From positions 124,001-188,000 of the IMG/VR virus record IMGVR_UViG_3300027996_002186: 64,000 nucleotides of DNA; one strand, given 5' to 3'. This document shows, one piece after another, positions 8,827-40,189 of the stretch. A model generated the notes under the pieces. The model did not search any database and had not been told where the DNA came from. It saw nothing but the letters and a program-made list of their open reading frames with translations. The position numbers and the translations under genes were made by a program. Positions within the stretch are counted from its first letter, which is position 1, and the number at the start of each line of letters is the position of its first letter.

Positions 8827-9280
8827 ATGCCGCAGTTTTTGGGTCGGGTATATCAAAGTAAAATTGTGTTACGCTATTACAACTTGGAAGTTTCATTTGT
8901 TTAACTTCTAGTAAACACCCCGATTCTAATATGTTTTTTAATTCTTTACCTTTTGGTGTATCTAGAACTTTTAATACTATTTTTAACTCATCCACTTTAT
9001 TATTCGTTATGATAAAAGACATTGACCTAACAAAAAATGATATACTTTTTAATAATATATCAGAATATTCTGGTTTTCCTAAACTACCATATACCGGACT
9101 ATTTATTTTTGATATTTCGGTTACGTCAAATCCAATCCTTTTACCTTCGTTTAATAAAACATTAAGTTTTATCTCACGTTTATATTGTATCCATTGTGGA
9201 AATTTAGTTAGTAATCGATCATAGTTATTTAACTCAACATCATTTCCTAAAACAACATTATATTCTAGTAAATCATCCAT
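8825..9280 (-). CDS. Catalytically dead paralog of the gp21-type prohead protease
   Basis: VYGSLGKPE vs own protease VYGEFDHPD; KVLDTPKGKELKNILESGC vs KLLSTYWGKEAKALVDDGC; the VSSR motif is absent. Confidence 0.55.
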   Translation of the reverse strand: MDDLLEYNVVLGNDVELNNYDRLLTKFPQWIQYKREIKLNVLLNEGKRIGFDVTEISKINSPVYGSLGKPEYSDILLKSISFFVRSMSFIITNNKVDELKIVLKVLDTPKGKELKNILESGCLLEVKQMKLPSCNSVTQFYFDIPDPKTAA

Positions 9281-11184
9281 TACATTTTTATGAAATCTAT
9301 TTGTTTCTTTTCTAAATCAACACCATTAACTATGATAGTTATCTCATCACCTAATCTGATTCTATCCCCAACATCATTAAAGATTTGATAGTTTTGTGTG
9401 TCTATATTATAATTACCTTCTAAAGATTGGTATCTTATCATACCCTCACATTTACTTTCTGTTAATTCAACATATAATCCCCAATCAGTTACACCAGAAA
9501 CTATCCCAGTGAATACTTTCCCAATTTTATCTAAAAGATATTCGGCTTGTTTGTATTTTATAGAATCTCTTTGGGCTCTGGATGCTATCAATTCTCTACT
9601 TGAACACCATTTAGCCTCATCTTCAACTTTAGTAGGGTTTCCTTGTTTCTTATTATGTAAGAAATCAAGTAACATTCTATGTGTCATTAAATCCGGATAC
9701 CTACGTATTGGACTTGTGAAGTGTGAATAGTGTGTGAATCCTAATCCATAATGTCCTATGTTTTGTATTGTGTATGTTGCTTTAGACATACATCTAGTTA
9801 CAACCGTACTTAACATATTTTCTTCTGGTGTTCCTTTAACATCTTGTAATAACTTGTTTATAGATTTTTTAAGATCTTCAGATTCGCCTTCTATTTTGAA
9901 TTCGTGACCAAAAGTCTTACACACATTTGATAATGCTGTTAACTTCTCCATATTAGGAGTATCATGTACTCTAAATACATTAGTTCTCGAATTACTTGAT
10001 AATAGTTTAGCAACAGATTTATTAGCTAGTAACATAAATTCTTCAATTAATTTATTAGCTTCTTTCTGTTCTTTGAAATAAACACCAATTGGTTTCTTAT
10101 TATCCTCTGCTAATTCGAATCGAACTTCCACACCACCCATCTCTAATGAACCGTCTTTAATTCTTTTCTTTCTTATTTTCTTAGCTAATGTGTTTAGATG
10201 ATTAATCATCAATGGATAAACACTACCATCACCTGTGTATTTTTCATCATTACCCTCGATTATCTCTTGAGCATCCTCATAAGCAAATCTCATATCAGAA
10301 TGTATGACTGTTTTACCGTGCCATTCTTTAACAATTTTACCATCCGAGTCTAGTGTAAATACAACTGAAAATGCTAACCTATCTTCATTAGGTTTTAATG
10401 AACATATTCCATTACTAAGTCTTTCTGGTAACATAGATACACATCTATCAACTAGATACACAGATGTTGCTCTTTCATAAGCTTCATCATCTAATTTAGT
10501 ACCAGGTTTAACATAGTGTCCAACATCAGCAATATGTACTCCTACTTCAAATCTATTATCATTCATTACTTTAAGTGATAATGCGTCATCAAAATCACGA
10601 GCATCTACTGGGTCGATTGTTATTGTTGTTGTATCTCTCATATCTCTACGAGATTTTATTTCCTTTTCGGTTATTACTTCTGGTGTGAGTTCTGATTCGT
10701 TTATAACATCTTGTGGAAAATCAACTGGTAATCCATATTCATACATTATCGAATTCATCTCAGCGTTATTATCACCAACATCTCCTAATATCTTAGTTAT
10801 CTTAGCTTGTGGGGATTTACTATCTACCCACTTTGTGAGTTCGACTATAACCTTTTGGTTATCTTCCGATTTTAATCCACCCTTGATATAGAAATCAACT
10901 GGTATTCTTTTATTATCTGCTATAACAAATGTTGATTTACCATTAATATGTACCTTACCAACGAATTCTTTCTTATTCCTTGATATTGTGTTAATTACTT
11001 TAGCTTCTAATTTCCTATCACCCCTAAATACTTCTACAATTACTTTATCTAAGTGTAAAGCATTTTTAGTATTCTTCTTATAAATGAAAATTGATTTATC
11101 GTTTATTGTGATTGTTGCGTGTCTGTTTGTTGAGAACTCTATTTGACCTTCGTAACGTTCTCCTTCTTTTATATTATTATTCAT
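9280..11184 (-). CDS. rnr: Ribonuclease R (RNB family, S1 C-terminus; N-terminal HTH absent)
   Basis: TIDPVDARDFDDALS, ATSVYLVDR..MLPE.LSN..CSL, LIEEFMLLAN, HFTSPIRRYPD. Frame is open to 11244; likely start MNNNIK at 11184. Confidence 0.95.
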   Translation of the reverse strand: MNNNIKEGERYEGQIEFSTNRHATITINDKSIFIYKKNTKNALHLDKVIVEVFRGDRKLEAKVINTISRNKKEFVGKVHINGKSTFVIADNKRIPVDFYIKGGLKSEDNQKVIVELTKWVDSKSPQAKITKILGDVGDNNAEMNSIMYEYGLPVDFPQDVINESELTPEVITEKEIKSRRDMRDTTTITIDPVDARDFDDALSLKVMNDNRFEVGVHIADVGHYVKPGTKLDDEAYERATSVYLVDRCVSMLPERLSNGICSLKPNEDRLAFSVVFTLDSDGKIVKEWHGKTVIHSDMRFAYEDAQEIIEGNDEKYTGDGSVYPLMINHLNTLAKKIRKKRIKDGSLEMGGVEVRFELAEDNKKPIGVYFKEQKEANKLIEEFMLLANKSVAKLLSSNSRTNVFRVHDTPNMEKLTALSNVCKTFGHEFKIEGESEDLKKSINKLLQDVKGTPEENMLSTVVTRCMSKATYTIQNIGHYGLGFTHYSHFTSPIRRYPDLMTHRMLLDFLHNKKQGNPTKVEDEAKWCSSRELIASRAQRDSIKYKQAEYLLDKIGKVFTGIVSGVTDWGLYVELTESKCEGMIRYQSLEGNYNIDTQNYQIFNDVGDRIRLGDEITIIVNGVDLEKKQIDFIKM

Positions 11185-11194
11185 ATTCCTTTTA

Positions 11195-11596
11195 TTAGGA
11201 AATATCGTTTTGTTTATTATCGCGTTTGGATATGTTGTCAACACCGTACTTATCTATAAGTGTTTTTTTCATTTTTTTCAATATTTTATTGTTTTGTATT
11301 GGATAGTCAACACCGTAATTTTCTCTTAATGATTTTTTCCTTTTTGATTCTGAGCATTTTCTACAAGAGTATTCACCCCAGTTATTATCATATTTAATAT
11401 AGTTCTTGAATATTACATCCTTTTCGATTCCACATTTATCACACTTACACTTTATTTTATAGTGGGATCCTTTGGATAGTAATTCAACTGGTATTATTAA
11501 TAATTCACCAATTGTAACATCACTATATCCTAGATTTTCATAGTATGAATAGTTTGCTTCGCTTATTTTAACTTTTATCTCTCTAGTTATTATCAT
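11195..11596 (-). CDS. Zn-binding protein with YGVD repeats typical of phage homing-endonuclease N-termini, no nuclease domain
   Basis: CKCDKC, CRKC, ENYGVDYP, DKYGVDNIS. Confidence 0.5.
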   Translation of the reverse strand: MIITREIKVKISEANYSYYENLGYSDVTIGELLIIPVELLSKGSHYKIKCKCDKCGIEKDVIFKNYIKYDNNWGEYSCRKCSESKRKKSLRENYGVDYPIQNNKILKKMKKTLIDKYGVDNISKRDNKQNDIS

Positions 11597-13992: not shown

Positions 13993-15723
13993 ATGTCACA
14001 CATTAGAATAGACAAACAAAAAGCTATGAAGAAATGGTCTCCAGTATTAGAGAACATGGGAGTTGCTGGTGAAGATAGATTGGATTGGATGTCAGAATAT
14101 GCTGAATTTCACTCAATCAATGAAAACGCTTACGCAAACGCTTCAAACGTATCGGGTATGGGAGCTGTAGTAGCTGCACAACCTAATTCATTAGCTGGTA
14201 ACACAATTGGCAATTACGCTGACTCAACTGGTTCAGGTGATGTTGGTCAAAACCTTTTACCGGTAGCGATGAAAATAGCAGCTCAAACAATCGGTTTAGA
14301 TTTAGTAGCTGTTAAACCTTCTCCAGGTCCAAAAATTGATTTATTATATATCGACTTTAGATATGATGATGCTCATTTAGGAGATTCAGACGAAAGACCA
14401 CAAGTCTTTAAGATTGCACCAAACGCTACATTTTTAACTACTGGTGCTGGTGGTATGACAGCAGTTATCGCTGGATTAAGAGCTCAATTAGCTACGAATA
14501 CAATCACTGAAACAGTTGGTGGTTTAACTGGTAGAATGTGGAATGATATCACAGATGGTTCAGATGTAGTTGTAGAACCAACACCTTCAAAAGAAGGAAA
14601 AGTTGAATTTTTAGGATTCTCTAGAATTGATGGTTATCCAATGTTCAGAGCTTACAGACAGATGAATACATCTCACACAGATGTTGGTTCAGCTCAAGCA
14701 AACTGGGGATTTGACCCGACTAGAAACACATTTAGTCCTACAATGTCAATGGCTTCTCAAATTACTGATTTAGGAGATGTTACTTTAACTGATGAGCCTA
14801 CTATTGAATTAGTATCAGCTCTTGAAGATCACATTCCTGGTTTCTCTGCAAACTGGATGTCGGATGCTACTGGCCCTGCTGGTAACTATCCAATGGATAG
14901 AGAAATGGACGATAAAAGATACTCTGGTATCATCGGACCAAAAATTAGTTCTAAAACAGTTGCCGTAGGTACTATTGAAGTATCTTCAGCTCTTAGAAGA
15001 ACTGAAATTGAAGATATCAAAGCTAACACTGGTATGGATATCGTTCAAAAAATGGAGTCAATTCTTGTTAATGAATTATCTCAAACAATCTCTAAGCAAA
15101 TTGTTGCTAAGATATTTGAAATGGGTTCACTTAACAGATTATCTGCACCAGCTTATGTTGGAACAGCACCGGCACCATTAGCGGGACAAACAATCTTTGA
15201 CTTAAACACAGCTTATGCAACTGTTGCTGCTGGTAATGGAAACGTTGGTGGTGAAACTACACACGCTGTTCAAAGAAAGCTTGTAACTAAGATAGCTCAC
15301 GCTTCTAACTACATCGCTACAGAGGGACGTGTTGGTCCAGCTCAATACCTTATTACAAATGGGGGATTAGCAGCAGCACTTTCTGATATCTCTGGTTATA
15401 CAATTAACCCAGTGAAATCAAAAATCAATGGTCAAGGTCAATTATACCCAGTAGGTTCAATTGGAGATATTTCAATATATGTTGATCCATATATGAGATA
15501 TAACGACAATAGAATTGCTCTTGGTAGAAAGAACAATCCAGATCAACCAGGTATTATTTTTGTACCTTACTTAATGGCTCAGTCTATATCTGTAATTTCT
15601 GAAGCGACTTTCGCTCCTAGAATGTTACTAAGATCTAGATACGCTGTAACAGAAGTTGGTTGGTTCCCACAAAAACAATTTATGACTATCGAAGTTACAG
15701 ATGTGAATACACTTCTTAACTAA
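13993..15723 (+). CDS. gp23: Major capsid protein (T4 gp23-like)
   Basis: KKWSPVLE, IAAQTIGLDLVAVKP, ILVNELSQTISKQIV, IYVDPY, FVPY, TFAPRMLLRSRYA; follows protease/scaffold. Confidence 0.92.
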   Translation: MSHIRIDKQKAMKKWSPVLENMGVAGEDRLDWMSEYAEFHSINENAYANASNVSGMGAVVAAQPNSLAGNTIGNYADSTGSGDVGQNLLPVAMKIAAQTIGLDLVAVKPSPGPKIDLLYIDFRYDDAHLGDSDERPQVFKIAPNATFLTTGAGGMTAVIAGLRAQLATNTITETVGGLTGRMWNDITDGSDVVVEPTPSKEGKVEFLGFSRIDGYPMFRAYRQMNTSHTDVGSAQANWGFDPTRNTFSPTMSMASQITDLGDVTLTDEPTIELVSALEDHIPGFSANWMSDATGPAGNYPMDREMDDKRYSGIIGPKISSKTVAVGTIEVSSALRRTEIEDIKANTGMDIVQKMESILVNELSQTISKQIVAKIFEMGSLNRLSAPAYVGTAPAPLAGQTIFDLNTAYATVAAGNGNVGGETTHAVQRKLVTKIAHASNYIATEGRVGPAQYLITNGGLAAALSDISGYTINPVKSKINGQGQLYPVGSIGDISIYVDPYMRYNDNRIALGRKNNPDQPGIIFVPYLMAQSISVISEATFAPRMLLRSRYAVTEVGWFPQKQFMTIEVTDVNTLLN

Positions 15724-15797: not shown

Positions 15798-16187
15798 ATG
15801 ATTAAAAAGTATAATTATTTCTTTGAGTCTAAGAAGACTAAGTTCCCTAATATTAAGAAAGTTGAAGTAGAAGGATTCTTTATTCATATAGGTAGAGACT
15901 CCAAATCTAACGACCACTTAACATTTAACGTTGCTGATGATAAAGACATCTGGATGCACGCTAAGGGTGTTCCTGGGAGTCATGTTATTATAAGAGTTAG
16001 AGAAAACTTACCAACTCAAGAAATACTAAGATATGTTGCTGAATTAGCTAAAAAGAATAGTAAAGCTAGTAAAGAAGATAATGTAACTGTTGTTTATTGC
16101 CAAAGAAAATTTGTTAAGAAAGAAAGTGGTATGAATGAGGGTCAAGTAAGAGTTGATTATATCAATGCCTACGAAATCGTAGTTTGA
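15798..16187 (+). CDS. NFACT-R (DUF814-type) RNA-binding domain protein with CTS-like N-terminus
   Basis: IGRDSKSNDHLTF...DIWMHAKGVPGSHVII...VVYCQRKFVKK...GQV; N-terminus MIKKYNYFFES. Confidence 0.85.
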   Translation: MIKKYNYFFESKKTKFPNIKKVEVEGFFIHIGRDSKSNDHLTFNVADDKDIWMHAKGVPGSHVIIRVRENLPTQEILRYVAELAKKNSKASKEDNVTVVYCQRKFVKKESGMNEGQVRVDYINAYEIVV

Positions 16188-18655: not shown

Positions 18656-19132
18656 ATGATTAATAAATTCGAAGGTCGCTGGAGATTTCTATCAAACTTC
18701 TATCCGTGTGTGGTAGAACACCAAGGTATATCATATCCATCAAATGAACATTATTATGTTGCTATGAAAGTGACGGATGAACAATTTATTAATGGTAGAT
18801 ATTATACCGCTGGTGATTTCAGAGAAATGATAGCGACAATACCAAGTGCTGCTATTGCTAAAAAGTTAGGACAGAAAATAAAGGTTCGTAAAGATTGGGA
18901 AGTTAAGAAGATTGAATTTATGAACTGGGGTGTTAGAGAAAAATTTAATAACAACTCAACTCTTCGAGAATTATTATTATCAACTGGTGACGATGAACTA
19001 ATCGAGGGTAATTTTCATAAAGATACTTTTTGGGGAGTTTGTAATGGAAAGGGTAAAAACCATCTTGGTAAAATTCTTATGGAAGTAAGAAGAGAGTTGA
19101 GAGGTGAGAAGAGAGTTGGTCTGTTTATTTGA
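18656..19132 (+). CDS. NADAR (YbiA-like) ADP-ribosylhydrolase family protein
   Basis: FLSNFYP, YPSNEHYYVAMK, AKKLG, W..KK..FM..GVREKF, LLSTG..ELIEG...DTFWG, GKNHLGKILMEVR. Confidence 0.9.
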   Translation: MINKFEGRWRFLSNFYPCVVEHQGISYPSNEHYYVAMKVTDEQFINGRYYTAGDFREMIATIPSAAIAKKLGQKIKVRKDWEVKKIEFMNWGVREKFNNNSTLRELLLSTGDDELIEGNFHKDTFWGVCNGKGKNHLGKILMEVRRELRGEKRVGLFI

Positions 19133-19226: not shown

Positions 19227-20198
19227 ATGTCTGTTATTAGCTATTTTGGTGGCAAGTCCTCAAAGGTCTTCCATCAGTTCATCAACACAAGAATACCAAA
19301 AGATGGTATCAAAACTTATGTAGAACCATTCTCAGGTGCAATGGGAACGTATATGGATGACCCAAATCTTAAATTCGATACAGTTGTTTATAATGATAAG
19401 AACCGCCACCAGGTGAACTTATATAAGTGTTGTCAAAATCCAACAGAAATGTTGATACATATAGATAATCTAAAGAGTGGTTTATTACACACAACAGAAA
19501 CGGATCCAATAAAAAATTGGGATTTTTATAAAGCTATTTATAAGACATTTCAAAAGAATGATTTCTTAGATGATATGGATTTTGAGATTGGGGATTATGA
19601 AAAAGCTGCTATGTATGCTTTCTTAATTACATCAGCTCATAATTCAGTTTATCCAAGAGGAGCAGGGTTTAATGGTTATAAGAAGAATAATGGCAAACTT
19701 AAAATAGAAGCACTTGTTAATAAACTAAAGAAGGGTAAGTACACAGAGAAATTGGAATCAATTACTGAGTTCTATAATATTGATTTTGAGGAATTGATAA
19801 ACAAATATGATTCAGTAGATACATTTCTTTACTTAGACCCACCTTACGCTAGATTTGACGAGGCTAAAGGAATGGATGATGCTAGGAGACTATTCTGGTA
19901 TGGATGTGATGATGAAGGTGTCTTTGGACCCGAATCACATAGAAGGTTATTAGAAATGCTTAAAAAGACTGATTGTAGATGGTCATTATCTTATTATTAC
20001 TTTCCTTTATTAGAAGAATTATTACCAAGAGACCAATATAACTGGGTTGAGAAAGAAGTATTTAGAAGTTCTGCTCATGGTGGTAACAATTCGGATAATA
20101 AAAAGGTACAAGCTAAAGGTGTTGAGATGCTTATTATGAATTATAATCCAGAAACGGGAGAAAAAATCACTAATAAGGATGTCGAATGTGAACTTTAA
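19227..20198 (+). CDS. dam: Dam-like (D12 class) DNA adenine methyltransferase
   Basis: YFGGKS, YVEPFSGA, YND, FLYLDPPY, EMLIMNY. Confidence 0.88.
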   Translation: MSVISYFGGKSSKVFHQFINTRIPKDGIKTYVEPFSGAMGTYMDDPNLKFDTVVYNDKNRHQVNLYKCCQNPTEMLIHIDNLKSGLLHTTETDPIKNWDFYKAIYKTFQKNDFLDDMDFEIGDYEKAAMYAFLITSAHNSVYPRGAGFNGYKKNNGKLKIEALVNKLKKGKYTEKLESITEFYNIDFEELINKYDSVDTFLYLDPPYARFDEAKGMDDARRLFWYGCDDEGVFGPESHRRLLEMLKKTDCRWSLSYYYFPLLEELLPRDQYNWVEKEVFRSSAHGGNNSDNKKVQAKGVEMLIMNYNPETGEKITNKDVECEL

Positions 20199-20931
20199 GA
20201 TTGTTGATATTTTCGAGAGTGTTAAGGATGATATTTTTTCAATTCAACCATATTTATCTATTAATAATAATCTAAAAAATTTCACTACTAATACATTTAG
20301 TTTATCAATTCCGATGGAATTGGATGGGTTTGGTGTTGATACTGATGCTGAGATGATAAGTCTTATTAGGATTGAGATGAATCAAAGTATTTATAAAACA
20401 ATTTTGAAAGAATTATTCAATACTTCAAAATTTGATTATATAGATATTTCTAAAACTGTTAATACTCACCAATCTGTTAATGATATTATTGATTTTTTAT
20501 CTATTGATTGTATAGATAAAAAATATAAGTATTTAGTTACGAATACTTCTATGGCTAATTCAATAGGTGATAGTTCATTATTTAACTTTAAACCAAGTGC
20601 ATCGGTTGTAGAATCTCAAGGTTTACCATATTTATTTGGGTCTTTGATTAAATATGATGTTTATATAGATCCTTTTATGAAATTTGATGATAATAGAATT
20701 TGCTTATTTGATTCTTGTGAGATTAATATAGAGAATATAAATCAAACTGTTACATCAGCGGCCACATTTGCACCTAAGATGATGATAAGTTATGATGTGG
20801 CTTTTAAAATAGCAGACTCTAAGGTTATATTTGTTTTAGATGGTAATGAATCAAGTAGTTCTTATAAGCAATATAAACAATTACAGCGTGATATAAAAAT
20901 AAATTCTTTATTAGATGGCTCAACAGATTAA
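20179..20931 (+). CDS. Truncated, diverged paralog of the major capsid protein (250 aa)
   Basis: YLVTN, QGLPYLFGSL.....YIDPFMKFDDNRICL and SAATFAPKMM align with MCP YLITN, QGQLYPVGSI.....YVDPYMRYNDNRIAL and SEATFAPRML. Confidence 0.8.
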   Translation: MSNVNFKIVDIFESVKDDIFSIQPYLSINNNLKNFTTNTFSLSIPMELDGFGVDTDAEMISLIRIEMNQSIYKTILKELFNTSKFDYIDISKTVNTHQSVNDIIDFLSIDCIDKKYKYLVTNTSMANSIGDSSLFNFKPSASVVESQGLPYLFGSLIKYDVYIDPFMKFDDNRICLFDSCEINIENINQTVTSAATFAPKMMISYDVAFKIADSKVIFVLDGNESSSSYKQYKQLQRDIKINSLLDGSTD

Positions 20932-31226: not shown

Positions 31227-34200
31227 TTAGTTTAATTCCTCTACATTCTGAATCTTTCCATCACTCGCATCTTGTATAAATTCATCTATTGTGTTTGTTG
31301 ATTTGTCAATATTTGTCAATAATCCTATTAATAAATCCAGTTGTTGTGGTATTGATCTACCTTCTAAACCATACTTAGTTTTATCTGTAAGATTAGGTAA
31401 CTTAACATTCTTTTTACCAACTGATTCTGGTTTATCTTCTCCACCCCATAATCCGGTAAATTTACCGAGGTCATCCATTGGGTGCCATCCACCATCATTC
31501 TCACTTTTTATTTGACTTAAATCATTTGCTAATTGATCAGTTTGAAGAGATTTAACTTCCTTTAGCTTTTCCATGTTGATTGCTTCTAAAGCAATTCCAA
31601 ATTTCTCAAAAGAGGTGGTTAATATATCATATGAATCCGCTAATACAACCATACCACCTGCAATTCTCATTATTGGATCCTCTCCAAATCCAAATGCGCC
31701 AGCAACACTACCCAAGAAGGATCCTTCTTTTTCTTCGACTCTTGTTAAATACTCAGCTAATCTAGTATAGTCTATTATATTTCTGCTTAATTTCTTTATA
31801 AAGAGAGGGTCTATTTTAACATCAAAATATTTTTTATTTTTATAAAAAATATAAGCTGTGTTTGCCATAGCTTGTGCTACTCTATCAATAATACCCATAT
31901 CTTTTTCAGTTCTAACCACTTCCGTTTTCGTACTCGTCTTAGCACCGAAACCAGCAAATCCTCCTGATTTACTACTTGTAGTTTTTGTTGAAGTAGTTAC
32001 TAACATATCATCAAGCCATTTTCCCAACTTTGCGAATCCCATTACATTCGTAGCTATATTTGGTATAAATTTTGGATCTAGTTTAACTGCAAAATATCTT
32101 TTATTATCAAAAAGAATACGGGCTGTGTTTGCCATTGATTGAACACCACCCTCCAACATTGAGGAGTTCACAGAAAAACTGTATTCGCTGTATCCAGCCA
32201 TAGTTAAATCATAAAATATATCTAAAAAGGAATTTATCGCCTTTCGAATACCGATACCCCATGCTTCATCAGGATGATTTTGCCAATATTCTTTCCCAAC
32301 ACTCCCTAGTGTTTCTCCAGCACTCCTTATAGATCTAGCTATGATTCTTATCCCAGATCCTAGTGATTGTGCTACTTCCTCTTGGCTTGGTCCAGTCCAT
32401 CCACCACCATTTGTCATCATCAGATTAAAGACTTCCGAGAACGATCCAATTGCTTCTGCAACACCTTTACCCCAACCTTTACCAGGAACATTGTCCTTTT
32501 TCCATATTTCTGGGATAGTGTCATAAAATATCCAACCCGCATCAACTATCGCCCTTGAAACCGATCGAATTCCGTAACTCATTGCCTTTATTGTCGTAAC
32601 AGACGAAGAATACCAGCTCGTATTGTTCATAGCTTCAAATACTGGTGCAAATGAGTTAATTGCTGCTCCAACACCTTCTCCCCAACGTTTTTTTGGATAG
32701 TTTTTCTTAAATGCTGCTTTATTTTCTGCGAATATACCCGCTGCATCTATAATAGCATAAGATATAGATCGGATAGCTCTTTCCATATCAGCTACTGATG
32801 GTCCATTGGACCACCCTCCTTGATTGTTCAAAACCTCATATACTGGTGCGAATGCGCCAATTGCTGTTCCAACCCCTTCGGCCCAACGTTTTGATGGTCC
32901 ATCCTTGAATTGGTCACTCGCTCCGGAAAATTTATCAGCGGCTGATATAATACCATCAGAAACCGTTGTGATAGCATTCGTAAAATCATCAGGACCTACA
33001 CCACTACCACCAAGTATTGACATTATAGAATTCATCTGCATCATTTTATAAATAGGCATAAATGCTCCTAATGCTATCGATATTCCTTCTGCCCACTCTT
33101 TTGTTGGACCACCTTTATAATTTCCCTTATAAAGAGTATGTGATACGGCTACTATTGTATCTGCTATCGTCAACATCATACCCTGTGCTACTAAAAATGG
33201 ATCATCTCCTCCGAAGAATGAAATAATAGCACCCGCTACACTCATGACACCCAATGCCATTATAATTGGTGTAAATGTTAAATATAATAATGCTGTAGCT
33301 GTTGCCCATTCTAACATACCTGCATTATCATATTTACCCTTGGATAGAATATCTGATACTTTTGCTATAGTAGCAGCTACAACTAGTATAGCACCTAAAC
33401 CAGCTAAAAATATTAGTGCTTGTGGACCAAATACCATCAGACCCAAGAGTATAGCGGCGGTAGCCATAACTGTCATAGCTAAGGCCACTCCGGCTAACCA
33501 CTCTATACCTGGGTAGGTTTCATAAGTACCTAATGCTTGAATGTAATCCAATGCTACAATAGCAAGTGCTACAACTAGTATAGCAACTAAACCAGCTAAA
33601 AATACTAGTGCTTGTGGACCAAATACAAACGATCCTAAGAGTACAGCAGCGACACCCATCGCTACCATACTTAAACCTACTCCGATTATCCAATCTAAAC
33701 CTGGATATGTATCATAATTACCTAATGCTAAAATGTGTGATGTTACCATTACTGCTACCGCTATAATCAAAATTGCTAATCCACCTTTTAATAGATCAAC
33801 AACACCCATCTTACTTAATACCTTCATTGGTCCGACTAATGCAATAGTAAGACCGGCCATTAATACACCAATTGCTGCTATTTTAAGTATTAGTCCCCAA
33901 CTTATATCAGCGGTTAATGCTAAAATGTGTGATGATACCATAATCGCTATTGATATCAATGTAAAGAATATTGGTATTTTAGGGAGTGATGACCATTCCA
34001 TTTTATTCATTGCTTTAACTATTTTTACCATCCCAAATGATAAAACAACAAATAATATTGCTATAAGTACTGATGTAAACCATTGCATAAGACCCACTGG
34101 TTGTACTAAAGAGAGTGCGTATGATGCTCCTGCTATACCTAGTGCGATAGCTGGTAGAATTAATGGTAAGAAAATAGATGCTTGTATTAAATCTTTGGTA

Positions 34201-35051
34201 CCCATTCCCTTAAATGCTTGTAACATATTTCTAATACCATATGATACTACTGCGAATATTGCCGCTATGAATATAGATGCTATTACTTGTGAGAATCCTA
34301 TTGGTTGTACTAATCCTAATGCGTATGATGCGAGAGCAATACCTAATGCGATAGCTGGTAAAATCAATGGTAAGAAAAGAACAGATTTCACTATACTGGC
34401 CATTGATAGACCCTTAAATGCTCCTAATAATTTTCTAATACCAAATGCAATTACCGAAAATACACCAGCTACAAAAACAGCGGTTATTGCTTGCATAAAT
34501 GATATAGGCCTTATCATTGATAATGCGTAAGATGAAAGAGCTACTGCTATTGACATAAATACCATAGCTAAAGAAGCCAGAGCTATATCTTTTAATGAGG
34601 ATCCTTTGGTCGCTTCCGCCACTTGAGCAAACGCGAATCCTATTGCTACCATAGCTAATCCTAAACCAATAGCTGATAAAACATCAACCGGTCCGACTAA
34701 TTTCAACGCTAATCCTATTGCTAAAACAGCTACTGCTATTAGTAATATAGTACCAACACCTTTTTTAATACTACTTTCTTTCTTCTTATCAGTACCACTT
34801 TCCTCAATAACATCCTTAGATTTCTCTTTGGAAAGAGCTATTATTGTTTTCTGATTGGTTAAAATTTCTTGAGTATCAGTTTTAATTGATTGTATACCTA
34901 CGTTTATGGCTTCTAATTTCTTACCAAAATCACCTCCTTTTAATGCAGCGCCTGTTGCAGAAGCACCATCTTTCTTACTATCGAGAGCTGCCGCTATCAT
35001 TTCTAATGAAACTGATAAATTGTCTAATGCTTTTAATAATTGCTTATCCAT
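31227..35051 (-). CDS. Tape-measure-like protein (1274 aa)
   Basis: Ala/Gly-rich helical repeats (VQPIGF x3; W.EG...AI..F.PV x5) with long hydrophobic stretches; late promoter upstream. Confidence 0.65.
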   Translation of the reverse strand: MDKQLLKALDNLSVSLEMIAAALDSKKDGASATGAALKGGDFGKKLEAINVGIQSIKTDTQEILTNQKTIIALSKEKSKDVIEESGTDKKKESSIKKGVGTILLIAVAVLAIGLALKLVGPVDVLSAIGLGLAMVAIGFAFAQVAEATKGSSLKDIALASLAMVFMSIAVALSSYALSMIRPISFMQAITAVFVAGVFSVIAFGIRKLLGAFKGLSMASIVKSVLFLPLILPAIALGIALASYALGLVQPIGFSQVIASIFIAAIFAVVSYGIRNMLQAFKGMGTKDLIQASIFLPLILPAIALGIAGASYALSLVQPVGLMQWFTSVLIAILFVVLSFGMVKIVKAMNKMEWSSLPKIPIFFTLISIAIMVSSHILALTADISWGLILKIAAIGVLMAGLTIALVGPMKVLSKMGVVDLLKGGLAILIIAVAVMVTSHILALGNYDTYPGLDWIIGVGLSMVAMGVAAVLLGSFVFGPQALVFLAGLVAILVVALAIVALDYIQALGTYETYPGIEWLAGVALAMTVMATAAILLGLMVFGPQALIFLAGLGAILVVAATIAKVSDILSKGKYDNAGMLEWATATALLYLTFTPIIMALGVMSVAGAIISFFGGDDPFLVAQGMMLTIADTIVAVSHTLYKGNYKGGPTKEWAEGISIALGAFMPIYKMMQMNSIMSILGGSGVGPDDFTNAITTVSDGIISAADKFSGASDQFKDGPSKRWAEGVGTAIGAFAPVYEVLNNQGGWSNGPSVADMERAIRSISYAIIDAAGIFAENKAAFKKNYPKKRWGEGVGAAINSFAPVFEAMNNTSWYSSSVTTIKAMSYGIRSVSRAIVDAGWIFYDTIPEIWKKDNVPGKGWGKGVAEAIGSFSEVFNLMMTNGGGWTGPSQEEVAQSLGSGIRIIARSIRSAGETLGSVGKEYWQNHPDEAWGIGIRKAINSFLDIFYDLTMAGYSEYSFSVNSSMLEGGVQSMANTARILFDNKRYFAVKLDPKFIPNIATNVMGFAKLGKWLDDMLVTTSTKTTSSKSGGFAGFGAKTSTKTEVVRTEKDMGIIDRVAQAMANTAYIFYKNKKYFDVKIDPLFIKKLSRNIIDYTRLAEYLTRVEEKEGSFLGSVAGAFGFGEDPIMRIAGGMVVLADSYDILTTSFEKFGIALEAINMEKLKEVKSLQTDQLANDLSQIKSENDGGWHPMDDLGKFTGLWGGEDKPESVGKKNVKLPNLTDKTKYGLEGRSIPQQLDLLIGLLTNIDKSTNTIDEFIQDASDGKIQNVEELN

Positions 35052-35071
35052 AAAAAACTTTTATTTCCAAA

Positions 35072-35108
35072 GTATATATAAAAACTGGATACGTCTTCTT
35101 AATATATA
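35072..35108. promoter_or_regulatory. Divergent late promoter cores (TTATATATAC minus 35072-35081; TTAATATATA plus 35099-35108)
   Basis: Motif on each strand between divergent genes. Confidence 0.55.
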
Positions 35109-35130
35109 CATGTACAAATAATACATTATT

Positions 35131-35580
35131 ATGGGATTTAAAAAGTTAGTTAATTACTACGTATTACGCAAATCTTTAAAAGAAATCGAGATGAATAGAA
35201 TTTTAGAAAAAATATACAAGAAAATAAAAATTTCTACTAAAGAAAAGAAATTTTTGGATTTATATAATCGTACTACCGAAGAGGTTGCTAAGGATTTGAT
35301 GTTCTTGTCTAAAAATGCAACTTCTAGAAAGGTTAAAGAAATATTAGAAAGAGGTAAGAAAGTCATTTGTGATTTACATGATAGGGATGGTAAAATTGGA
35401 CTTGAGATACTTAGTATTGAGAATAATGTCGATTCTGTTACATGTGATGTTATTATGAGAAATGAGACACATCAATTACATGATAGATTTTTATATAATA
35501 TTATTTATAATAATATAAAAAAAGAGTATTCATTACAAGAACAAGACGAATATTATGAAAAAATAGAAGCTACGAAATGA
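35131..35580 (+). CDS. Hypothetical protein with DUF6576-like segment
   Basis: MNRILEKI......TKEKKFL. Confidence 0.65.
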   Translation: MGFKKLVNYYVLRKSLKEIEMNRILEKIYKKIKISTKEKKFLDLYNRTTEEVAKDLMFLSKNATSRKVKEILERGKKVICDLHDRDGKIGLEILSIENNVDSVTCDVIMRNETHQLHDRFLYNIIYNNIKKEYSLQEQDEYYEKIEATK

Positions 35581-35849
35581 TAAAGAAATTTAAACAATTT
35601 AATGAAGAAATATCTGGTACTGAATTGGTTGGTCCTATTGGTCCTGCTTATGGTGAGACGGGGTTACAGAATAAAACCATAAATTCACATGACACAAATG
35701 TTATTTATTCAGAGATGGATTCTAAGATATATACAATAGATGAATATAATGATATTTATGGTGAGTACCTTAAATTTGGTGGATCTCCGTTAGATGGATT
35801 TACAAAAGAAAATATAGATATAATATTGGATTTTTTACAAACTAATTAA
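35577..35849 (+). CDS. CTS-tagged small protein
   Basis: MIKKFKQFNEE. Confidence 0.7.
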   Translation: MIKKFKQFNEEISGTELVGPIGPAYGETGLQNKTINSHDTNVIYSEMDSKIYTIDEYNDIYGEYLKFGGSPLDGFTKENIDIILDFLQTN

Positions 35850-35894
35850 TTTAATTTATATATACATTTTGATAAAAAACAGAAATCAAAATTT

Positions 35895-37223
35895 ATGAGC
35901 AAGTTAGTAACATTAAACGGGTTAAATGATGAAGAAATATTAAATGATATATTCATCGATGAGATAATTGTCCTTGAAGATATACAGGGAAGTAAAATAT
36001 GGGTTAATTGGGATGGTAAGCATTTTAATATCAAACCTAAATCTATATCAAATGAGTCAATAAATCTAATTGACTTAGCAATGCAAAATTATTATAATCC
36101 GGCTATCAATTATTTAAATTCATTAGATGATAGAACAAAAAGCCTTTTAAATAAAAAATGGTGGTTTTGTTTCGAGTATTTTCCTGATGAGCAACCTGCT
36201 AATATAGAGTATAATAGAGTTCCTAAGAATAATCTTGTTCTTACAGCTATTTCTAAGTCTAGAAAATATGAATTTACTATTGAAGAGTTAGATGAGTATT
36301 CTAGATTATTTAATGTTGATGTGGTGCCGGTTATATATCAAGGTACTTTGACCGAAAGTATGAAAGAAGCGATAAAGTATTTTATTAATACTAGTGAGGA
36401 TGATTTAGAGTATATTTTTGGTGAAAAGTCATTTGCATTCTTCTTTTATGGAATATTAAACCCATCAGTTAATAACTCTTTCTTAATGGATAATGAATTC
36501 CAAAATAATGTTGAGAAACTTATTATTAAGAGTAAAACAAAGGATATTTCATTTCAGTTATTAAATCCTTTATATAAAAGGTTGAGTGATGATAATCATA
36601 CAGACTTTGTTGAGATTTATACATTAATATTAATTAATTTCTTGAATTTTTCTCAATCTATTAATTTAGAAGATATTAAATTGAAAGGTGATAGAAAAGA
36701 TGAAGTTTACATATATTTAGTTTCTAAAATATTCAATGTTTATATATCGGAGGTCAAACAAGATTTACTTGACTTTGACTTTGTTGTTCCTGAATTCTTT
36801 GATAAGGATAAATTTAAGATAAATATTGAATTGATTAGTAATAAATTAACAAAGGATTATATAAAAGAGAGTGATAAATTAGAATATATTTTTAAGGTTA
36901 TTCTTGGATCTTTCAACAAGAAAAGAAAGAAACCAATTGGTATATTCACTGAGAATACAGTTAAGTTATTTAATAAATTTGTAGTTGATATCGATGATTA
37001 TATCGATACTTATTTAGGAAAACTACATGAAATTGAATTAGGTAGATCTGGTCTACTAGATTTCGGTGACTTCTTTGATATTCAATATGATACTGATGGA
37101 GAGGGTGAAGTTTATCCAGATGTTTACTCAGAGTTTTCTAAGACTGGTGGTCAGAACAAGAAGAAGAAAAAAGGTAAGGGTGGTAAATTCCCAATTGATC
37201 CAGGTAAAATTCCATTTAAATAA
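35895..37223 (+). CDS. RNA-ligase-like (Rnl2-type nucleotidyltransferase fold) protein lacking the adenylated Lys
   Basis: VLEDIQGS in place of EKxDGS; FCFEYF, VVPVIYQG, VEKLIIK resemble motifs III, IIIa and IV. Confidence 0.45.
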   Translation: MSKLVTLNGLNDEEILNDIFIDEIIVLEDIQGSKIWVNWDGKHFNIKPKSISNESINLIDLAMQNYYNPAINYLNSLDDRTKSLLNKKWWFCFEYFPDEQPANIEYNRVPKNNLVLTAISKSRKYEFTIEELDEYSRLFNVDVVPVIYQGTLTESMKEAIKYFINTSEDDLEYIFGEKSFAFFFYGILNPSVNNSFLMDNEFQNNVEKLIIKSKTKDISFQLLNPLYKRLSDDNHTDFVEIYTLILINFLNFSQSINLEDIKLKGDRKDEVYIYLVSKIFNVYISEVKQDLLDFDFVVPEFFDKDKFKINIELISNKLTKDYIKESDKLEYIFKVILGSFNKKRKKPIGIFTENTVKLFNKFVVDIDDYIDTYLGKLHEIELGRSGLLDFGDFFDIQYDTDGEGEVYPDVYSEFSKTGGQNKKKKKGKGGKFPIDPGKIPFK

Positions 37224-37414
37224 TGATTGATATTAAAATGACCTCTGTCGAGGTAAAGGCCGAAGTACGCGAACTAAAATGTAAATATACTCGTGAAATG
37301 GCTAAGGATATACACTATTATAGTGGTTTAGATCCTTTTAGTATGGATAATAGAAGAACAACAAGAAAAGATTCGATTAATAATATTTTTAATATAACAA
37401 AACATGATAAATAA
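37223..37414 (+). CDS. 63-aa mini-protein consisting of a gp23-like capsid segment plus the R..SINNIF motif
   Basis: VEVKAEVRELKCKYTREMAKDIHYYSGLD resembles T4 gp23 VIEAKSRQLKAAYSIELAQDLRAVHGMD; overlaps both neighbours. Confidence 0.65.
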   Translation: MIDIKMTSVEVKAEVRELKCKYTREMAKDIHYYSGLDPFSMDNRRTTRKDSINNIFNITKHDK

Positions 37415-38666
37415 TCCGCCTATAAAGAATATGAAGGTATCAAAAAAATTATCCAGTACGGATTCTTCCAAAAATATAGTTGAAAAGCTAAACAAGAAAA
37501 CTTTCCTATTACAATACTTACCATCCGTTTTAGAATACTTAGAATCAGAAAAATACATAAATTATAAAAATGAAAAGTTAAAAACAGCTTACTTGATCGA
37601 TATCATACATAATATGGTATTAAAATATTATTTCAAGAAAGAGAATAAATTTGTTATAAATGCAACTATATTGAAAGATAAGTATGGATATCTTTATAAT
37701 TATTATATCAATTATCTAATTGAGACCAAGATAATAAGTATGGTTTCTAATTATAGGAAAGGTGTATCTTCTCGTAAATATTCACTAAATGCTAAAATCA
37801 TCAAATCAAAGATTCAAAGAAGATATAGAAACAAAGATAAAGTCTTATTGAAGAAATATAAAAAGAAAGTAATGGATAGCATTGACTTCTCTGATAATGA
37901 TGATTATTTGATAGGTAAAGATATCCGAGAGAAATTAATATCTGACCTTTTTTCCGTTGAGATTCAATTCGATAGAGCTATATTTTTCCTGGATGCATTA
38001 AAAGATGAAAAATATGATGTCTATAATAGAAATGTTTATTCTGTTGAGTGTGTTAATGATAAGCATATATTTTATCACTTTGATAGCTATGGTAGAATGC
38101 ACACCAATTTCACAATACTTAGATCATTCATTAGAAAGAATTGTTTATTGATAGATGGTGAGGAAACTTGTGAGATAGATATTAAAAATAGCCAACCATT
38201 ATTCCTATCTAAATTAATAAAAGATAGTGATACTAAGTGGGTCAAGGAGGAAGAGTTTGAATTATTTAGAGAACTAACACTTAGTGGTAATTACTACCAA
38301 TACATGATGAATGTATTGGGTATTAAAAATAGAAACGATGCTAAGGAATTAACATACAAAGTTCTTTTTGGTAGAAACATTACTAGTAAGGCTGATATTG
38401 GATTTAGAAAGGCTTTCCCGACTATACACAATTTTATAAAATTATATAAAAAGGATAATGGTAATTATAAAACGATGGCTTATGATTTACAAAAAGCAGA
38501 GTCGAATCTTATATTCAATCGAATAATAAGACGTATAATTGTATTATACCCAGAAATAAAAATGATAACGGTACATGATAGTATTGTTTTTCCTAAAAAA
38601 TATAAAGACATTATTGATGATATCTTTGAACAAGAACTTGAAAATGAATTCAATTTAACAAAATAA
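37404..38666 (+). CDS. Compact family-A polymerase-superfamily protein (TV-Pol/T7-RNAP-like core, no exonuclease)
   Basis: YGRMH, motif A EIDIKNSQP, motif B RNDAKELTYKVLFG, Q..ES, motif C TVHDS. Confidence 0.75.
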   Translation: MINNPPIKNMKVSKKLSSTDSSKNIVEKLNKKTFLLQYLPSVLEYLESEKYINYKNEKLKTAYLIDIIHNMVLKYYFKKENKFVINATILKDKYGYLYNYYINYLIETKIISMVSNYRKGVSSRKYSLNAKIIKSKIQRRYRNKDKVLLKKYKKKVMDSIDFSDNDDYLIGKDIREKLISDLFSVEIQFDRAIFFLDALKDEKYDVYNRNVYSVECVNDKHIFYHFDSYGRMHTNFTILRSFIRKNCLLIDGEETCEIDIKNSQPLFLSKLIKDSDTKWVKEEEFELFRELTLSGNYYQYMMNVLGIKNRNDAKELTYKVLFGRNITSKADIGFRKAFPTIHNFIKLYKKDNGNYKTMAYDLQKAESNLIFNRIIRRIIVLYPEIKMITVHDSIVFPKKYKDIIDDIFEQELENEFNLTK

Positions 38667-38676
38667 TATATACAAT

Positions 38677-38838
38677 ATGAAAACTTACTATTTAAAATCA
38701 AAATTATCAAAAGAGGTTATAAGTAAATCAGTTTTTGAATCATTATCAATAGCTATTGAGTATTTTTCTGAAGTTAAGAGATTAAACCCTGAAGAACTTC
38801 TTAAAATATACATAGTCAATGATAGTGAACTAAAATAG
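38677..38838 (+). CDS. 53-aa hypothetical protein missed by the ORF track (MKTYYLKSKLSKEV...ELK)
   Basis: Hand translation; TAATATATAC immediately upstream; fills the intergenic gap. Confidence 0.6.
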   Translation: MKTYYLKSKLSKEVISKSVFESLSIAIEYFSEVKRLNPEELLKIYIVNDSELK

Positions 38839-38853
38839 TTAATATATACCTTT

Positions 38854-39393
38854 GTGATTGATTTAACTAACCCCAAAATATCATATATTGTGATATCATC
38901 TGAAAAGATTGATGATATTATGTCAATTTTGTATGCTAAAAATTATCAAATTATACCGATAAAGGGTTATTATCAAGGTCAATATGAGGATTCATTGATG
39001 GCTTTTGGTGTTGATAATGATGAGTTAAGAAAAGATTTGATTTTTTTACTTAACCATTTTAGAGAGGATTGTGGTATAGTTAAATACTTTGGTGAGACCG
39101 GTGCTAAGAAAGTGTTCAAAGACGGCTCAGAGAAGCCCTTAGGTATCGTATTGTATAATACAGACTCAGATAACATTTCATATTTATATGATGGTATATC
39201 GTTCTCTTTTGTTGAACAAGTTAGATATTGGAAACCTAAGAATAAAGAAGATTTTTCTGTTGGTATGTTAGTTGAATATATGAATAATAATAAGTGGTAT
39301 GAAAAGGAAGTTATTAATCCATCAGAAGAATACCATAAGCTATATAAGCTTATGATAAAGTATGATAAGATTAGAGTAGCTACTACTAACTAA
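38854..39393 (+). CDS. Hypothetical protein (179 aa)
   Basis: GTG start 5 nt after TTAATATATA. Confidence 0.7.
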   Translation: MIDLTNPKISYIVISSEKIDDIMSILYAKNYQIIPIKGYYQGQYEDSLMAFGVDNDELRKDLIFLLNHFREDCGIVKYFGETGAKKVFKDGSEKPLGIVLYNTDSDNISYLYDGISFSFVEQVRYWKPKNKEDFSVGMLVEYMNNNKWYEKEVINPSEEYHKLYKLMIKYDKIRVATTN

Positions 39394-40189
39394 TCTCAAA
39401 CCAAACAATTCGATTCTCGAATGTTGGTGTTTCTTTTATAAAATAAGTTTGATAATTATCTCCGTTATTAACATTGTTAACAACATTTAATCCTGTACAT
39501 CTCTCACCTTTTGGTCTTACTCCGATTACTTTACTTGGATTTATTTTACTTGAGTGTATTACTTGAGCCCCATTTATATTACCTATGATGTCATCATAAT
39601 TATTTGATAAATTAAAATTATATGATGTTGATAATAAGTATTCTACTATATTATCTCCTATAATAAATGCGGTAGCGGGACCTAAGTTACTTTTCATAGA
39701 TAAAACATTACTAATAAATGTCATCTTTGTGATTATTCTTCTGGAATCAGCATCTGATTGTTCATTTGTTGTTAAAAATTTATCATTTTTTAATTTAAGA
39801 GTTACGTCTGTGTAAAATTTACATTTTTTCATTGGTTTACTTGTTAAAGTATCCAATGTTGATATAATATCATTATATAATAATGCTTCACTTATGAATT
39901 TTTTAGCAGTTACATTTTGCGACATCATTCTTGTTGAGAATGTTCCAATTGTATCCAACCCATCATAAATACCTTGCGGTAACCAATCCATATCATCATA
40001 TTCTTCTTGTTTTTCAGCAAGAACAGAATTTATAGATGATTGTCTATGTCTTCTTTTGAGTTCATTCATTATCCACTCATCATCAGATGATAAAGTATCC
40101 GTATAATAAATAACACCCTTGGGTAAAGAGGGTTTATTATTTTCTGTGTAATTACATATCAATTTTATATTAGACAGCAAGGTGCTCAT
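39386..40189 (-). CDS. Second diverged, truncated major-capsid-protein paralog
   Basis: SRRIITKMTFISNVLSMKSNLGPATAFI aligns with MCP QRKLVTKIAHASNYIATEGRVGPAQYLI; IGNING..V and VIGVR..GL.VV also align. Confidence 0.6.
   Translation of the reverse strand: MSTLLSNIKLICNYTENNKPSLPKGVIYYTDTLSSDDEWIMNELKRRHRQSSINSVLAEKQEEYDDMDWLPQGIYDGLDTIGTFSTRMMSQNVTAKKFISEALLYNDIISTLDTLTSKPMKKCKFYTDVTLKLKNDKFLTTNEQSDADSRRIITKMTFISNVLSMKSNLGPATAFIIGDNIVEYLLSTSYNFNLSNNYDDIIGNINGAQVIHSSKINPSKVIGVRPKGERCTGLNVVNNVNNGDNYQTYFIKETPTFENRIVWFEIS

What the first reader, a model, noticed from the sequence alone, without database searches (positions are those of the whole stretch)
37223..37414. 63-aa mini-protein built from a canonical T4-type gp23 segment that differs from this phage's own MCP
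Seen: VEVKAEVRELKCKYTREMAKDIHYYSGLD, translationally coupled between the dead ligase and the PolA-like gene, followed by the RKDSINNIF motif. Known (recalled): T4 gp23 has VIEAKSRQLKAAYSIELAQDLRAVHGMD, a highly conserved segment. This phage's MCP reads TVAVGTIEVSSALRRTEIEDIKANTGMD there, so the mini-protein resembles other T4-like capsids more than its own. Inference: a capsid-mimic peptide aimed at a sensor or at competing T4-like phages.
Basis: partly seen in the sequence, partly recalled or inferred. Interest (0 to 1): 0.72.

Follow-up and report, generated by a model that had tools for sequence, protein, structure and literature searches.

The report
Capsid-gene fragment turned conserved mini-protein
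A marine giant phage carries a real, evolutionarily conserved 63-residue gene whose first 38 residues are a captured piece of a foreign T4-type (gp23) major capsid protein, the founding example here of a large family of such capsid-fragment mini-proteins whose job is still unknown.

Summary
Window 37223-37414 (+) encodes the 63-aa peptide as quoted, with a TAATG stop/start overlap upstream and an 11-nt overlap with the next gene. The gp23 likeness is homology, not chance: this copy scores Pfam Gp23 E 1e-4, relatives reach 35 bits (above the cut-off), and the family profile matches full-length gp23 capsid proteins (hhalign E 3.5e-12).

It belongs to a family of more than 100 sequence clusters of 41-80 aa proteins. 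The resident capsid protein's homologous stretch scores 5 bits or less against the mini's N-block, while foreign gp23 proteins score 27-58 bits. That divergent stretch is shared by the whole Mahaphage/Lak clade, including relatives that lack the mini-gene, so a foreign fragment was probably captured.

Selection acts on the peptide: pN/pS is 0.1-0.4 in the N-block and 0.2-0.5 in a basic C-terminal block, and about 1 in the linker. The N-block equals T4 gp23 residues 259-287: the strand plus the short P-domain helix that makes inter-capsomer contacts and carries head-length mutation sites.

Function is untested. My best guess is a free-standing mimic of that capsid element. A polymerase-accessory role is the main rival.

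The parts
37223..37414 (+). Mini-gene, 63 codons plus stop (protein P0001)
   Evidence: ORF list and translation. Orthologues at the same position in 15 or more loci.
37221..37225 (+). TAATG: the stop of the upstream 442-aa gene overlaps the mini's start
   Evidence: Sequence. A stop/start overlap or abutment is kept in L001, L002, L007, L011, L014, L017 and L018.
37226..37336 (+). N-block, residues 2-38: homologue of the gp23 I-domain-linker-2 strand, the short P-domain helix and the HG(M/L)D turn (T4 gp23 about 254-286; Pfam Gp23 positions 131-169)
37241..37312 (+). Most constrained core, TSVEV...KDI (residues 7-30). pN/pS is 0.1-0.4, GC is 40% against 26-28% in the flanks, and it holds the only CGC codon seen in 9 genes
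37313..37351 (+). Hypervariable linker (residues 31-43) with indels; pN/pS about 1
37352..37411 (+). C-block, residues 44-63: basic helix R(R/K)..RK.SI.(N/K)IF. Mean net charge is +4.8, where gp23 has -6 to -8. pN/pS is 0.2-0.5. No significant match to any MCP
37404..38666 (+). Downstream 420-aa family-A-polymerase-like gene. Its start overlaps the mini's last 11 nt, and it moves together with the mini
   Evidence: Atlas. Foldseek finds family A DNA polymerases at E 3e-5, probability 1.00. The L015 rearrangement breakpoint lies at the mini's 5' edge.
35895..37223 (+). Upstream 442-aa RNA-ligase(Rnl2)-like gene
   Evidence: Atlas neighbours carry PF09414/PF18043. No Pfam hit of its own.
14929..15039 (+). 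Homologous but divergent stretch (residues 313-349) of the phage's own MCP gene (13993-15723)

Best explanation
SHOWN. The ORF is a real small gene under purifying selection. It is one member of a large family of 41-80-aa proteins. Its first ~38 residues are homologous to one element of gp23-type major capsid proteins: the strand that returns from the insertion domain, plus the short P-domain helix and the turn that follows (T4 gp23 259-287). The C-terminal half has been remade into a basic amphipathic helix, where capsid proteins are strongly acidic.

The N-block is of the mainstream gp23 type, not the divergent type carried by the resident MCP. The whole Mahaphage/Lak clade shares that divergent type, including relatives that lack the mini-gene.

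INFERRED, ORIGIN. A ~40-codon piece of a foreign gp23 gene was captured and exapted once. It then spread or was rearranged into at least two genomic contexts.

INFERRED, MECHANISM. After long divergence, and in both contexts, the family still keeps the residues that gp23 proteins themselves conserve (R16, L18, W/Y22, T23, E25, A27, D29, the G-x-D turn). The peptide therefore most likely works as a free-standing copy of that capsid element. It would add its strand and dock its acidic short helix onto whatever surface this element normally meets in an HK97-fold capsomer, with the basic tail adding a second contact. The target could be a co-infecting mainstream gp23 phage, the phage's own capsid proteins, or a host factor that reads this element. 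In T4 the same element sits at the quasi-threefold inter-capsomer contacts and carries head-length mutations, so the expected effect is on capsomer-capsomer association.
For: Homology:
- Pfam Gp23 hits of this copy and relatives.
- Plain tblastn of family members hits MCPs of Mel-JY01 (2e-7) and immuto (9e-6). Subfamily-2 protein P0094 hits 1387 records; every row shown is an MCP or gp24 gene, or is unannotated there.
- Library-wide profile hits to gp23 MCPs; hhalign E 3.5e-12.

Selection:
- Core pN/pS 0.1-0.4, C-block 0.2-0.5, linker about 1.
- Synonymous and multi-step codon changes keep the residues, e.g. CGT/AGA for R24.

Foreign type:
- N-block 27-58 bits on foreign gp23 against 4.6 or less on own-clade MCPs.
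- The divergent MCP stretch is shared by LR756501, LR756504, LR756500 and Lak.
- LR756501 and LR756504 lack the mini.

Function independent of the neighbours: a second subfamily has other neighbours yet is closer to subfamily 1 (hhalign E 7.5e-23) than to MCPs (E 4e-7).

Structural meaning of the element: T4 A268, A275, D285 and D287 head-length mutations and the charged short P-domain helix at quasi-threefold contacts (PMC9546572), mapped by the alignment.

Charge inversion of the C-terminal half.

The AF2 model has an extended N-terminus, then helices 24-34 and 40-56, as in gp23.
Against: No partner has been identified.
- The gene does not sit in the head-gene module; it lies among nucleic-acid enzymes.
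- Genomes with and without the mini have equally divergent MCP stretches, so there is no sign that it compensates for the resident MCP.
- In subfamily 1 it is tightly tied to the polymerase-like gene.
- Transcription and translation are not shown. RNA-library contigs cover only upstream genes.
- Retention of gp23-consensus residues could reflect only the folding needs of a strand-helix unit.
Confidence: 0.35

Rival explanations
1. Accessory subunit or regulator of the downstream minimal family-A-polymerase-like enzyme. The capsid fragment was recruited as a small basic partner, for example a nucleic-acid clamp or tether. It is made in fixed ratio with the enzyme through translational coupling.
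For: - The mini lies immediately upstream of the polymerase-like gene in every subfamily-1 locus, mostly with a stop/start overlap.
- In L015 the homology to the window starts exactly at the mini's start, so the pair moved as a unit.
- In L024 an extra ORF sits before the mini, not after it.
- In L010 both genes are damaged together.
- The C-block is basic.
- The enzyme folds as a family A polymerase with invariant D259 and H391-D392-S393.
Against: - The polymerase-like gene exists without any mini in LR756501 and LR756504.
- Subfamily-2 minis have no such neighbour.
- This reading does not explain why gp23-consensus residues are kept.
Confidence: 0.25
2. One reading: an anti-defence decoy or antagonist that occupies a host immune sensor which recognises this conserved gp23 element.
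For: - Capsid proteins are known triggers of bacterial immunity: Gol-Lit (PMC3014915) and CapRel, CBASS (PMC13728456).
- The resident MCP has lost the mainstream motif, while a mainstream copy is kept separately.
- The linker is hypervariable.
Against: - No sensor is known for this segment. Gol lies in the first quarter of gp23, not here.
- A faithful copy of a trigger would be expected to set the sensor off rather than block it.
- The host is unknown.
Confidence: 0.12
3. A decaying relic of a recombination junction, kept open only as a coupling ORF that hands ribosomes from the ligase-like gene to the polymerase-like gene. The peptide itself would have no function.
For: - Whole-gene dN/dS is 0.2-0.75 against 0.03-0.17 in the flanks.
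- The linker evolves neutrally, with indels.
- The mini is absent from outgroup genomes in which the two flanking genes are far apart.
- A natural deletion variant exists.
Against: - Two blocks have pN/pS of 0.1-0.5 with residue-preserving codon changes.
- More than 100 diverged clusters keep the same motifs.
- Subfamily 2, and L015, L019 and L002, lack the overlap or the upstream gene yet keep the peptide.
Confidence: 0.1

Closest known systems
gp23-family major capsid proteins (Pfam PF07068; T4 gp23/gp24, HK97 fold)
   Same: Residues 2-38 are homologous and collinear with Pfam positions 131-169 (T4 259-287). In some members the whole peptide is collinear to position 195.
   Different: - Only about 17% of the fold is present: no A domain, no P-domain sheet, no N-arm and no insertion domain.
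- The C-terminal half is charge-inverted.
- It is encoded away from the head genes and evolves 2-3 times faster than its neighbours.
Gol peptide of T4 gp23 (trigger of the e14 Lit protease)
   Same: A short stretch of gp23 with a biological activity of its own.
   Different: Gol is not separately encoded. It lies in the first quarter of gp23 (PMC3014915), whereas this piece corresponds to the middle (259-287 of 521).
Capsid-assembly redirecting or interfering proteins of satellites (P4 Sid, SaPI CpmB, PICI capsid homologues) - recalled from general knowledge, not tested here
   Same: Small or capsid-related proteins that act on another element's capsomer-capsomer geometry. The element copied here carries T4 head-length mutation sites.
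   Different: This gene is encoded by a giant phage rather than a satellite. No binding or size effect has been shown, and there is no sequence relation.
Small processivity or accessory partners of family A polymerases (e.g. thioredoxin with T7 gp5) - recalled from general knowledge
   Same: A small protein genetically coupled to a minimal family-A-polymerase-like gene.
   Different: There is no evidence of binding, and the polymerase-like gene occurs without the mini in related genomes.

Membership tests
Pfam Gp23 (PF07068) major capsid protein | Profile match above the curated cut-off (24.4 bits) | tested here: inconclusive
   This copy scores 22.1 bits, E 1.1e-4, below the cut-off. Relatives P0003, P0005, P0007, P0011 and P0014 score 26-35 bits and L048's mini scores 35.3 bits, all above it.
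Pfam Gp23 (PF07068) major capsid protein | Complete HK97-type fold (N-arm, P domain with spine helix and sheet, A domain) able to form capsomers | tested here: not met
   The 63 aa cover profile positions 131-195 of 376 at most. The AF2 model is one extended stretch plus two helices.
Resident (Mahaphage/Lak-type) MCP lineage | Carries the clade's own version of the segment (VGTIEVSSALRRTEIEDIK...) | tested here: not met
   The N-block HMM gives 4.6 bits or less on all seven own-clade MCPs, against 27-58 bits on foreign gp23 proteins.
Gol-type gp23 immune trigger | Corresponds to the Gol region in the first quarter of gp23 | tested here: not met
   The mini aligns to T4 259-287 of 521. Gol lies in the first quarter (PMC3014915).
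Functional small protein (as opposed to a chance ORF) | ORF kept open, and purifying selection on the encoded residues across diverged genomes | tested here: met
   More than 100 clusters at 50% identity. Core pN/pS 0.1-0.4, C-block 0.2-0.5, linker about 1.
Functional small protein (as opposed to a chance ORF) | Evidence of transcription and translation | tested here: inconclusive
   Three metatranscriptome runs give short contigs over the upstream genes only and none over 37223-37414. Depth was too low to conclude anything.
Polymerase accessory subunit | Physical complex with the neighbouring polymerase-like protein | tested here: inconclusive
   The co-folding job gave no answer either way.
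Capsid-assembly interference or anti-defence decoy | Binds a capsid protein or a host sensor and changes the outcome of infection | not testable with these tools

The most novel reading that the evidence does not exclude
Giant phages carry a dedicated, mobile family of microproteins made from the inter-capsomer contact element of mainstream gp23 capsids. They use it as a weapon or control device on HK97-fold capsid assembly. One version: it poisons capsomer association of co-infecting mainstream gp23 phages, while the resident capsid, whose own copy of the element has diverged beyond recognition, is immune. The other version: it tunes curvature in the phage's own very large shell.
Probability: 0.15. 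Interest if true: 0.85.

Novelty: new variant of a known kind. Interest (0 to 1): 0.6.

Why it matters
Exaptation of a fragment of a structural gene into an independent, selected microprotein is rarely documented in phages, and I found no description of a capsid-derived one in the papers searched.

The family is large and gives a concrete, cheap experiment: a 60-aa peptide, tested against its own and foreign gp23 capsids. The outcome bears on three questions:
- how giant phages compete with ordinary T4-like phages;
- how they control very large shells;
- how capsid elements are read by host immunity.

It also warns annotators that short 'Gp23' hits in megaphage genomes are not broken capsid genes.

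Tried and rejected
- Co-folding of the mini with the downstream polymerase-like protein gave no answer either way and is not used as evidence.
- A Foldseek search of the 63-aa model against the PDB returned only chance hits with E above 5.
- A PDB sequence search with the family profile put T4 gp23 at E about 1, tied with a chance bromodomain hit. I used it only for residue mapping.
- Rfam found no RNA family in 35000-39500, so there is no intron signature. The promoter scan was uninformative in this AT-rich DNA.
- Metatranscriptome contigs were too sparse to decide on expression.
- I tested whether the C-block resembles the resident MCP's 'IVAKIF' more than foreign MCPs. On its own it matches no MCP, so I dropped the idea.
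- I tested whether the core is unusually conserved at the nucleotide level. It is no more conserved than the flanks.
- I considered that the mini supplies a strand and helix missing from the 250-aa MCP paralogue at 20179-20931. By my reading of its sequence, the paralogue seems to keep a shortened version of its own, and I could not test the idea further.
- The search for related loci failed on the broad alignment and on P0094 in viral contigs.
- Gol equivalence is rejected on position.

Full report
WHAT IS THERE

The stop of the upstream 442-aa gene (37221-37223) overlaps the mini's ATG (TAATG). The downstream 420-aa gene starts at 37404, 11 nt before the mini's stop.

The window is part of a 76.9-kb IMG/VR fragment with 30% GC. 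Its nearest complete relatives are the uncultured 635-735-kb phages LR745206, LR756502, LR756504 and LR756501, followed by the Lak phages. That places it in the Mahaphage-type megaphage group of Al-Shayeb et al. 2020 (PMC7162821, listed). The same DNA occurs in many seawater metagenomes. The window also holds a T4-type portal gene, a weak prohead-protease match and the MCP gene at 13993-15723.

IS THE gp23 LIKENESS REAL?

Yes.
- This copy's only Pfam hit is Gp23: residues 3-37 onto profile positions 135-169, E 1.1e-4, 22.1 bits, just under the 24.4-bit cut-off. PHROGs gives 'major head protein'.
- Every other tblastn hit of the mini in the phage collection (141 records besides its orthologue in LR745206.1) falls in a major capsid gene.
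- Fourteen close homologues exist in metagenomes. Of 17 family members, 15 hit Gp23. The most divergent (P0014) scores 34.8 bits, E 1.6e-8, over its whole length onto positions 132-195.
- A profile of the close family, searched against 1.84 billion representative proteins, returned 157 hits at E 1e-3 or better. About 110 are 41-80-aa proteins of the same design. The hits also include full-length 551-643-aa proteins (E 1e-6 to 4e-4) that are bona fide Gp23 (188-262 bits).
- hhalign of a 56-member family alignment against one such MCP gives probability 97.6 and E 3.5e-12 over 39 columns.
- Single family members reach MCPs by plain tblastn: P0017 against Microcystis phage Mel-JY01 at 2e-7, and P0094 against 1387 phage records, covering 87% of its length.

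ANATOMY AND SELECTION

The family has three parts.
- An N-block (residues 2-38 here). Family consensus: x-I-(D/N)-L-x-(M/L)-T-S-V-E-V-K-A-E-x-R-x-L-R-x-x-W-T-R-E-M-A-x-D-(I/L)-x-x-Y-H-G-(I/L)-D.
- A linker that varies in length and sequence.
- A basic C-block: R-(R/K)-x-x-R-K-x-S-I-x-(N/K)-I-F.

Nei-Gojobori counts on ten loci give whole-gene dN/dS of 0.2-0.75, against 0.03-0.17 for the two flanking genes. Split by segment, pN/pS is 0.1-0.4 in the core TSVEV...KDI, about 1 in the linker and 0.2-0.5 in the C-block. Residue-preserving codon changes are visible, for example GCT/GCG, ATA/ATT and CGT/AGA for R24. Nucleotide identity in the core is no higher than in the flanks, so the constraint acts on the protein.

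The peptide evolves faster than its neighbours: 37-78% identity where the flanks keep 58-95%. AlphaFold2 gives an extended N-terminus followed by helices 24-34 and 40-56 (pLDDT 73), the same order of elements as in gp23.

The part after the N-block is charge-inverted. The linker averages -2.1 and the C-block +4.8, where the same stretch of gp23 proteins carries -6 to -8. Taken alone, the C-block matches no MCP.

WHICH CAPSID PROTEIN DOES IT COME FROM?

An HMM of the N-block scores as follows.
- Uncultured gp23 proteins: 48-58 bits.
- The 484-kb phage LR756508, Microcystis phage Mel-JY01 and Flavobacterium phage immuto: 42-46 bits.
- Rhodothermus phage RM378: 34 bits.
- Classical T4-likes (Acinetobacter ZZ1, cyanophage Syn1): 27-28 bits.
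- The resident MCP and its relatives (LR745206, LR756502, LR756504, LR756501, LR756500, Lak-B5): 4.6 bits or less.

The divergent resident version (VGTIEVSSALRRTEIEDIKANTGMD...) is shared by the whole clade. LR756501 and LR756504 have both flanking genes, but far apart, and no mini next to either. By parsimony, the resident MCP's stretch had already diverged when the mini appeared. The N-block was therefore most likely captured from a foreign, mainstream gp23 gene. An older origin followed by loss in the outgroups cannot be excluded. The 40% GC of the core and its CGC codon (absent from about 190 Arg codons in eight other genes) fit a foreign origin, but they could also follow from amino-acid content.

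CONTEXT

In all subfamily-1 loci examined the order is ligase-like gene, mini, polymerase-like gene, a 179-aa gene, then a glycosyltransferase. The atlas search places the 442-aa protein among Rnl2-type RNA ligases and the 420-aa protein among 'family A polymerase palm' proteins. A model of the 420-aa protein finds family A DNA polymerases (Foldseek E 3e-5, probability 1.00). D259 and H391-D392-S393 are invariant.

The mini is tied to the polymerase-like gene.
- In L015 the upstream neighbourhood is unrelated, and homology to the window begins exactly at the mini's start.
- In L024 an extra ORF sits before the mini.
- In L010 a 109-nt deletion in the mini and a 16-nt duplication in the polymerase-like gene occur together in otherwise identical DNA.

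A second subfamily also exists (L048, L049, L051). It has a basic N-terminal extension and an acidic C-terminus. L048's member scores 35.3 bits on Pfam Gp23. Its neighbours are different: D12 methyltransferases, an aminoacyl-tRNA-synthetase-like gene and a PAS-domain gene. It is much closer to subfamily 1 (hhalign E 7.5e-23) than to MCPs (E 4e-7), and it shares the derived WTREM motif where MCPs have WTPEL. There was therefore one capture followed by dispersal, and the family's common denominator is the capsid-like block, not the polymerase neighbour.

WHAT THE COPIED ELEMENT DOES IN A CAPSID

The alignment to T4 gp23 maps mini V11-F39 onto I259-D287. According to the T4 head structures (PMC9546572), this region holds the short, negatively charged P-domain helix near the quasi-threefold axes, which makes charge contacts with neighbouring capsomers. 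It also carries the head-length mutations A268V, A275T, D285V and D287V/N. Three of those four positions correspond to mini C20, A27 and D37, of which A27 is nearly invariant and D37 is conserved. By my own positional inference, the strand just before the helix belongs to I-domain linker 2, which reinforces inter-capsomer association according to the same paper. The Gol region, which triggers Lit, lies in the first quarter of gp23 and is a different segment (PMC3014915).

HOW IT MOST LIKELY WORKS

Shown: origin by homology, selection on the peptide, family size and the contexts.

Inferred: the family keeps the very residues that gp23 proteins conserve, across deep divergence and in two genomic settings. 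I therefore think the peptide acts as a free copy of that capsid element and binds the surface the element normally meets, with the new basic helix as a second contact (confidence 0.35). The target may be a competitor's mainstream capsid, the phage's own capsid proteins, or a host factor.

Rivals:
- A polymerase-accessory role (0.25) is favoured by the linkage but weakened by subfamily 2 and by mini-less polymerase genes.
- A functionless coupling ORF (0.10) is hard to square with the block-wise selection.

Nothing here demonstrates expression. RNA-library contigs cover only upstream genes, at very low depth.

COMPARISON AND NOVELTY

By descent it is a fragment homologue of PF07068. It is not a capsid protein: it fails the fold-completeness test and this copy is under the Pfam cut-off. 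It is not a Gol analogue. I found no description of separately encoded capsid-fragment microproteins in the papers searched. I rate it a new variant of a known kind, an exapted gene fragment or molecular mimic, with a real chance of being something new if a capsid-directed activity is shown.

Noticed in passing
window 20179-20931 (+), just after the D12 N6-adenine methyltransferase gene at 19227-20198: A 250-aa ORF that is an N-terminally shortened paralogue of the clade's own MCP. blastp gives E 5e-14 against own MCP residues 439-546 and E 2e-15 against LR745206 MCP residues 352-544; Pfam Gp23 is only 0.011. It could be a vertex protein or another HK97-fold accessory.
   Followed up: partly
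L010 4215-4620 (JGI contig Ga0452209_006803), compared with L007: A natural variant with a 109-nt deletion that removes the mini from residue 27 onwards, plus a 16-nt tandem duplication that frameshifts the polymerase-like gene. The surrounding DNA is otherwise identical. It is either a defective genome in the population or an assembly artefact.
   Followed up: partly
window 37241-37254 (+): A small hairpin, ACCTC-TGTC-GAGGT, lies directly after the internal ATG at 37238. The third positions of the Thr and Glu codons pair as C:G, T:A or T:G in most loci, but pairing is broken in L022, L050, L051 and LR756502. This is weak evidence for an RNA element at the start of the ORF.
   Followed up: partly
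L048 2301-2513, L049 1333-1536, L051 962-1114: A second subfamily of gp23-fragment mini-proteins. It has a basic N-terminal extension and an acidic C-terminus, and it lies in other genomic contexts. In L048 and L049 a D12 methyltransferase lies upstream, the same enzyme class that precedes the MCP paralogue in the window.
   Followed up: partly
window 35895-37223 (+): The 442-aa protein resembles Rnl2-type RNA ligases only by language-model features; it has no Pfam hit. The gene is strongly conserved (dN/dS 0.03-0.06).
   Followed up: no
window 37404-38666 (+): A minimal 420-aa family-A-polymerase-like protein with invariant D259, K314, Y318, G323 and H391-D392-S393. The HDS motif is like that of T7 RNA polymerase (recalled from memory). 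More than 1300 homologues exist in metagenomes, some on contigs of up to 641 kb.
   Followed up: partly
window 37241-37312: The mini's core has 40% GC against 26-28% in both flanking genes. It contains a CGC arginine codon that is absent from eight other genes examined (about 190 Arg codons).
   Followed up: partly
window 9280-11244 (-), 15798-16187 (+), 18656-19132 (+): The region around the head genes also encodes an RNase II/R-type exoribonuclease (RNB, E 1e-110), an NFACT-R RNA-binding domain protein and a NADAR domain protein.
   Followed up: no
window 31227-35051 (-): A 1274-aa protein whose first half consists of many repeated hydrophobic, membrane-like segments. It is transcribed divergently from the operon that holds the mini-gene.
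   Followed up: no
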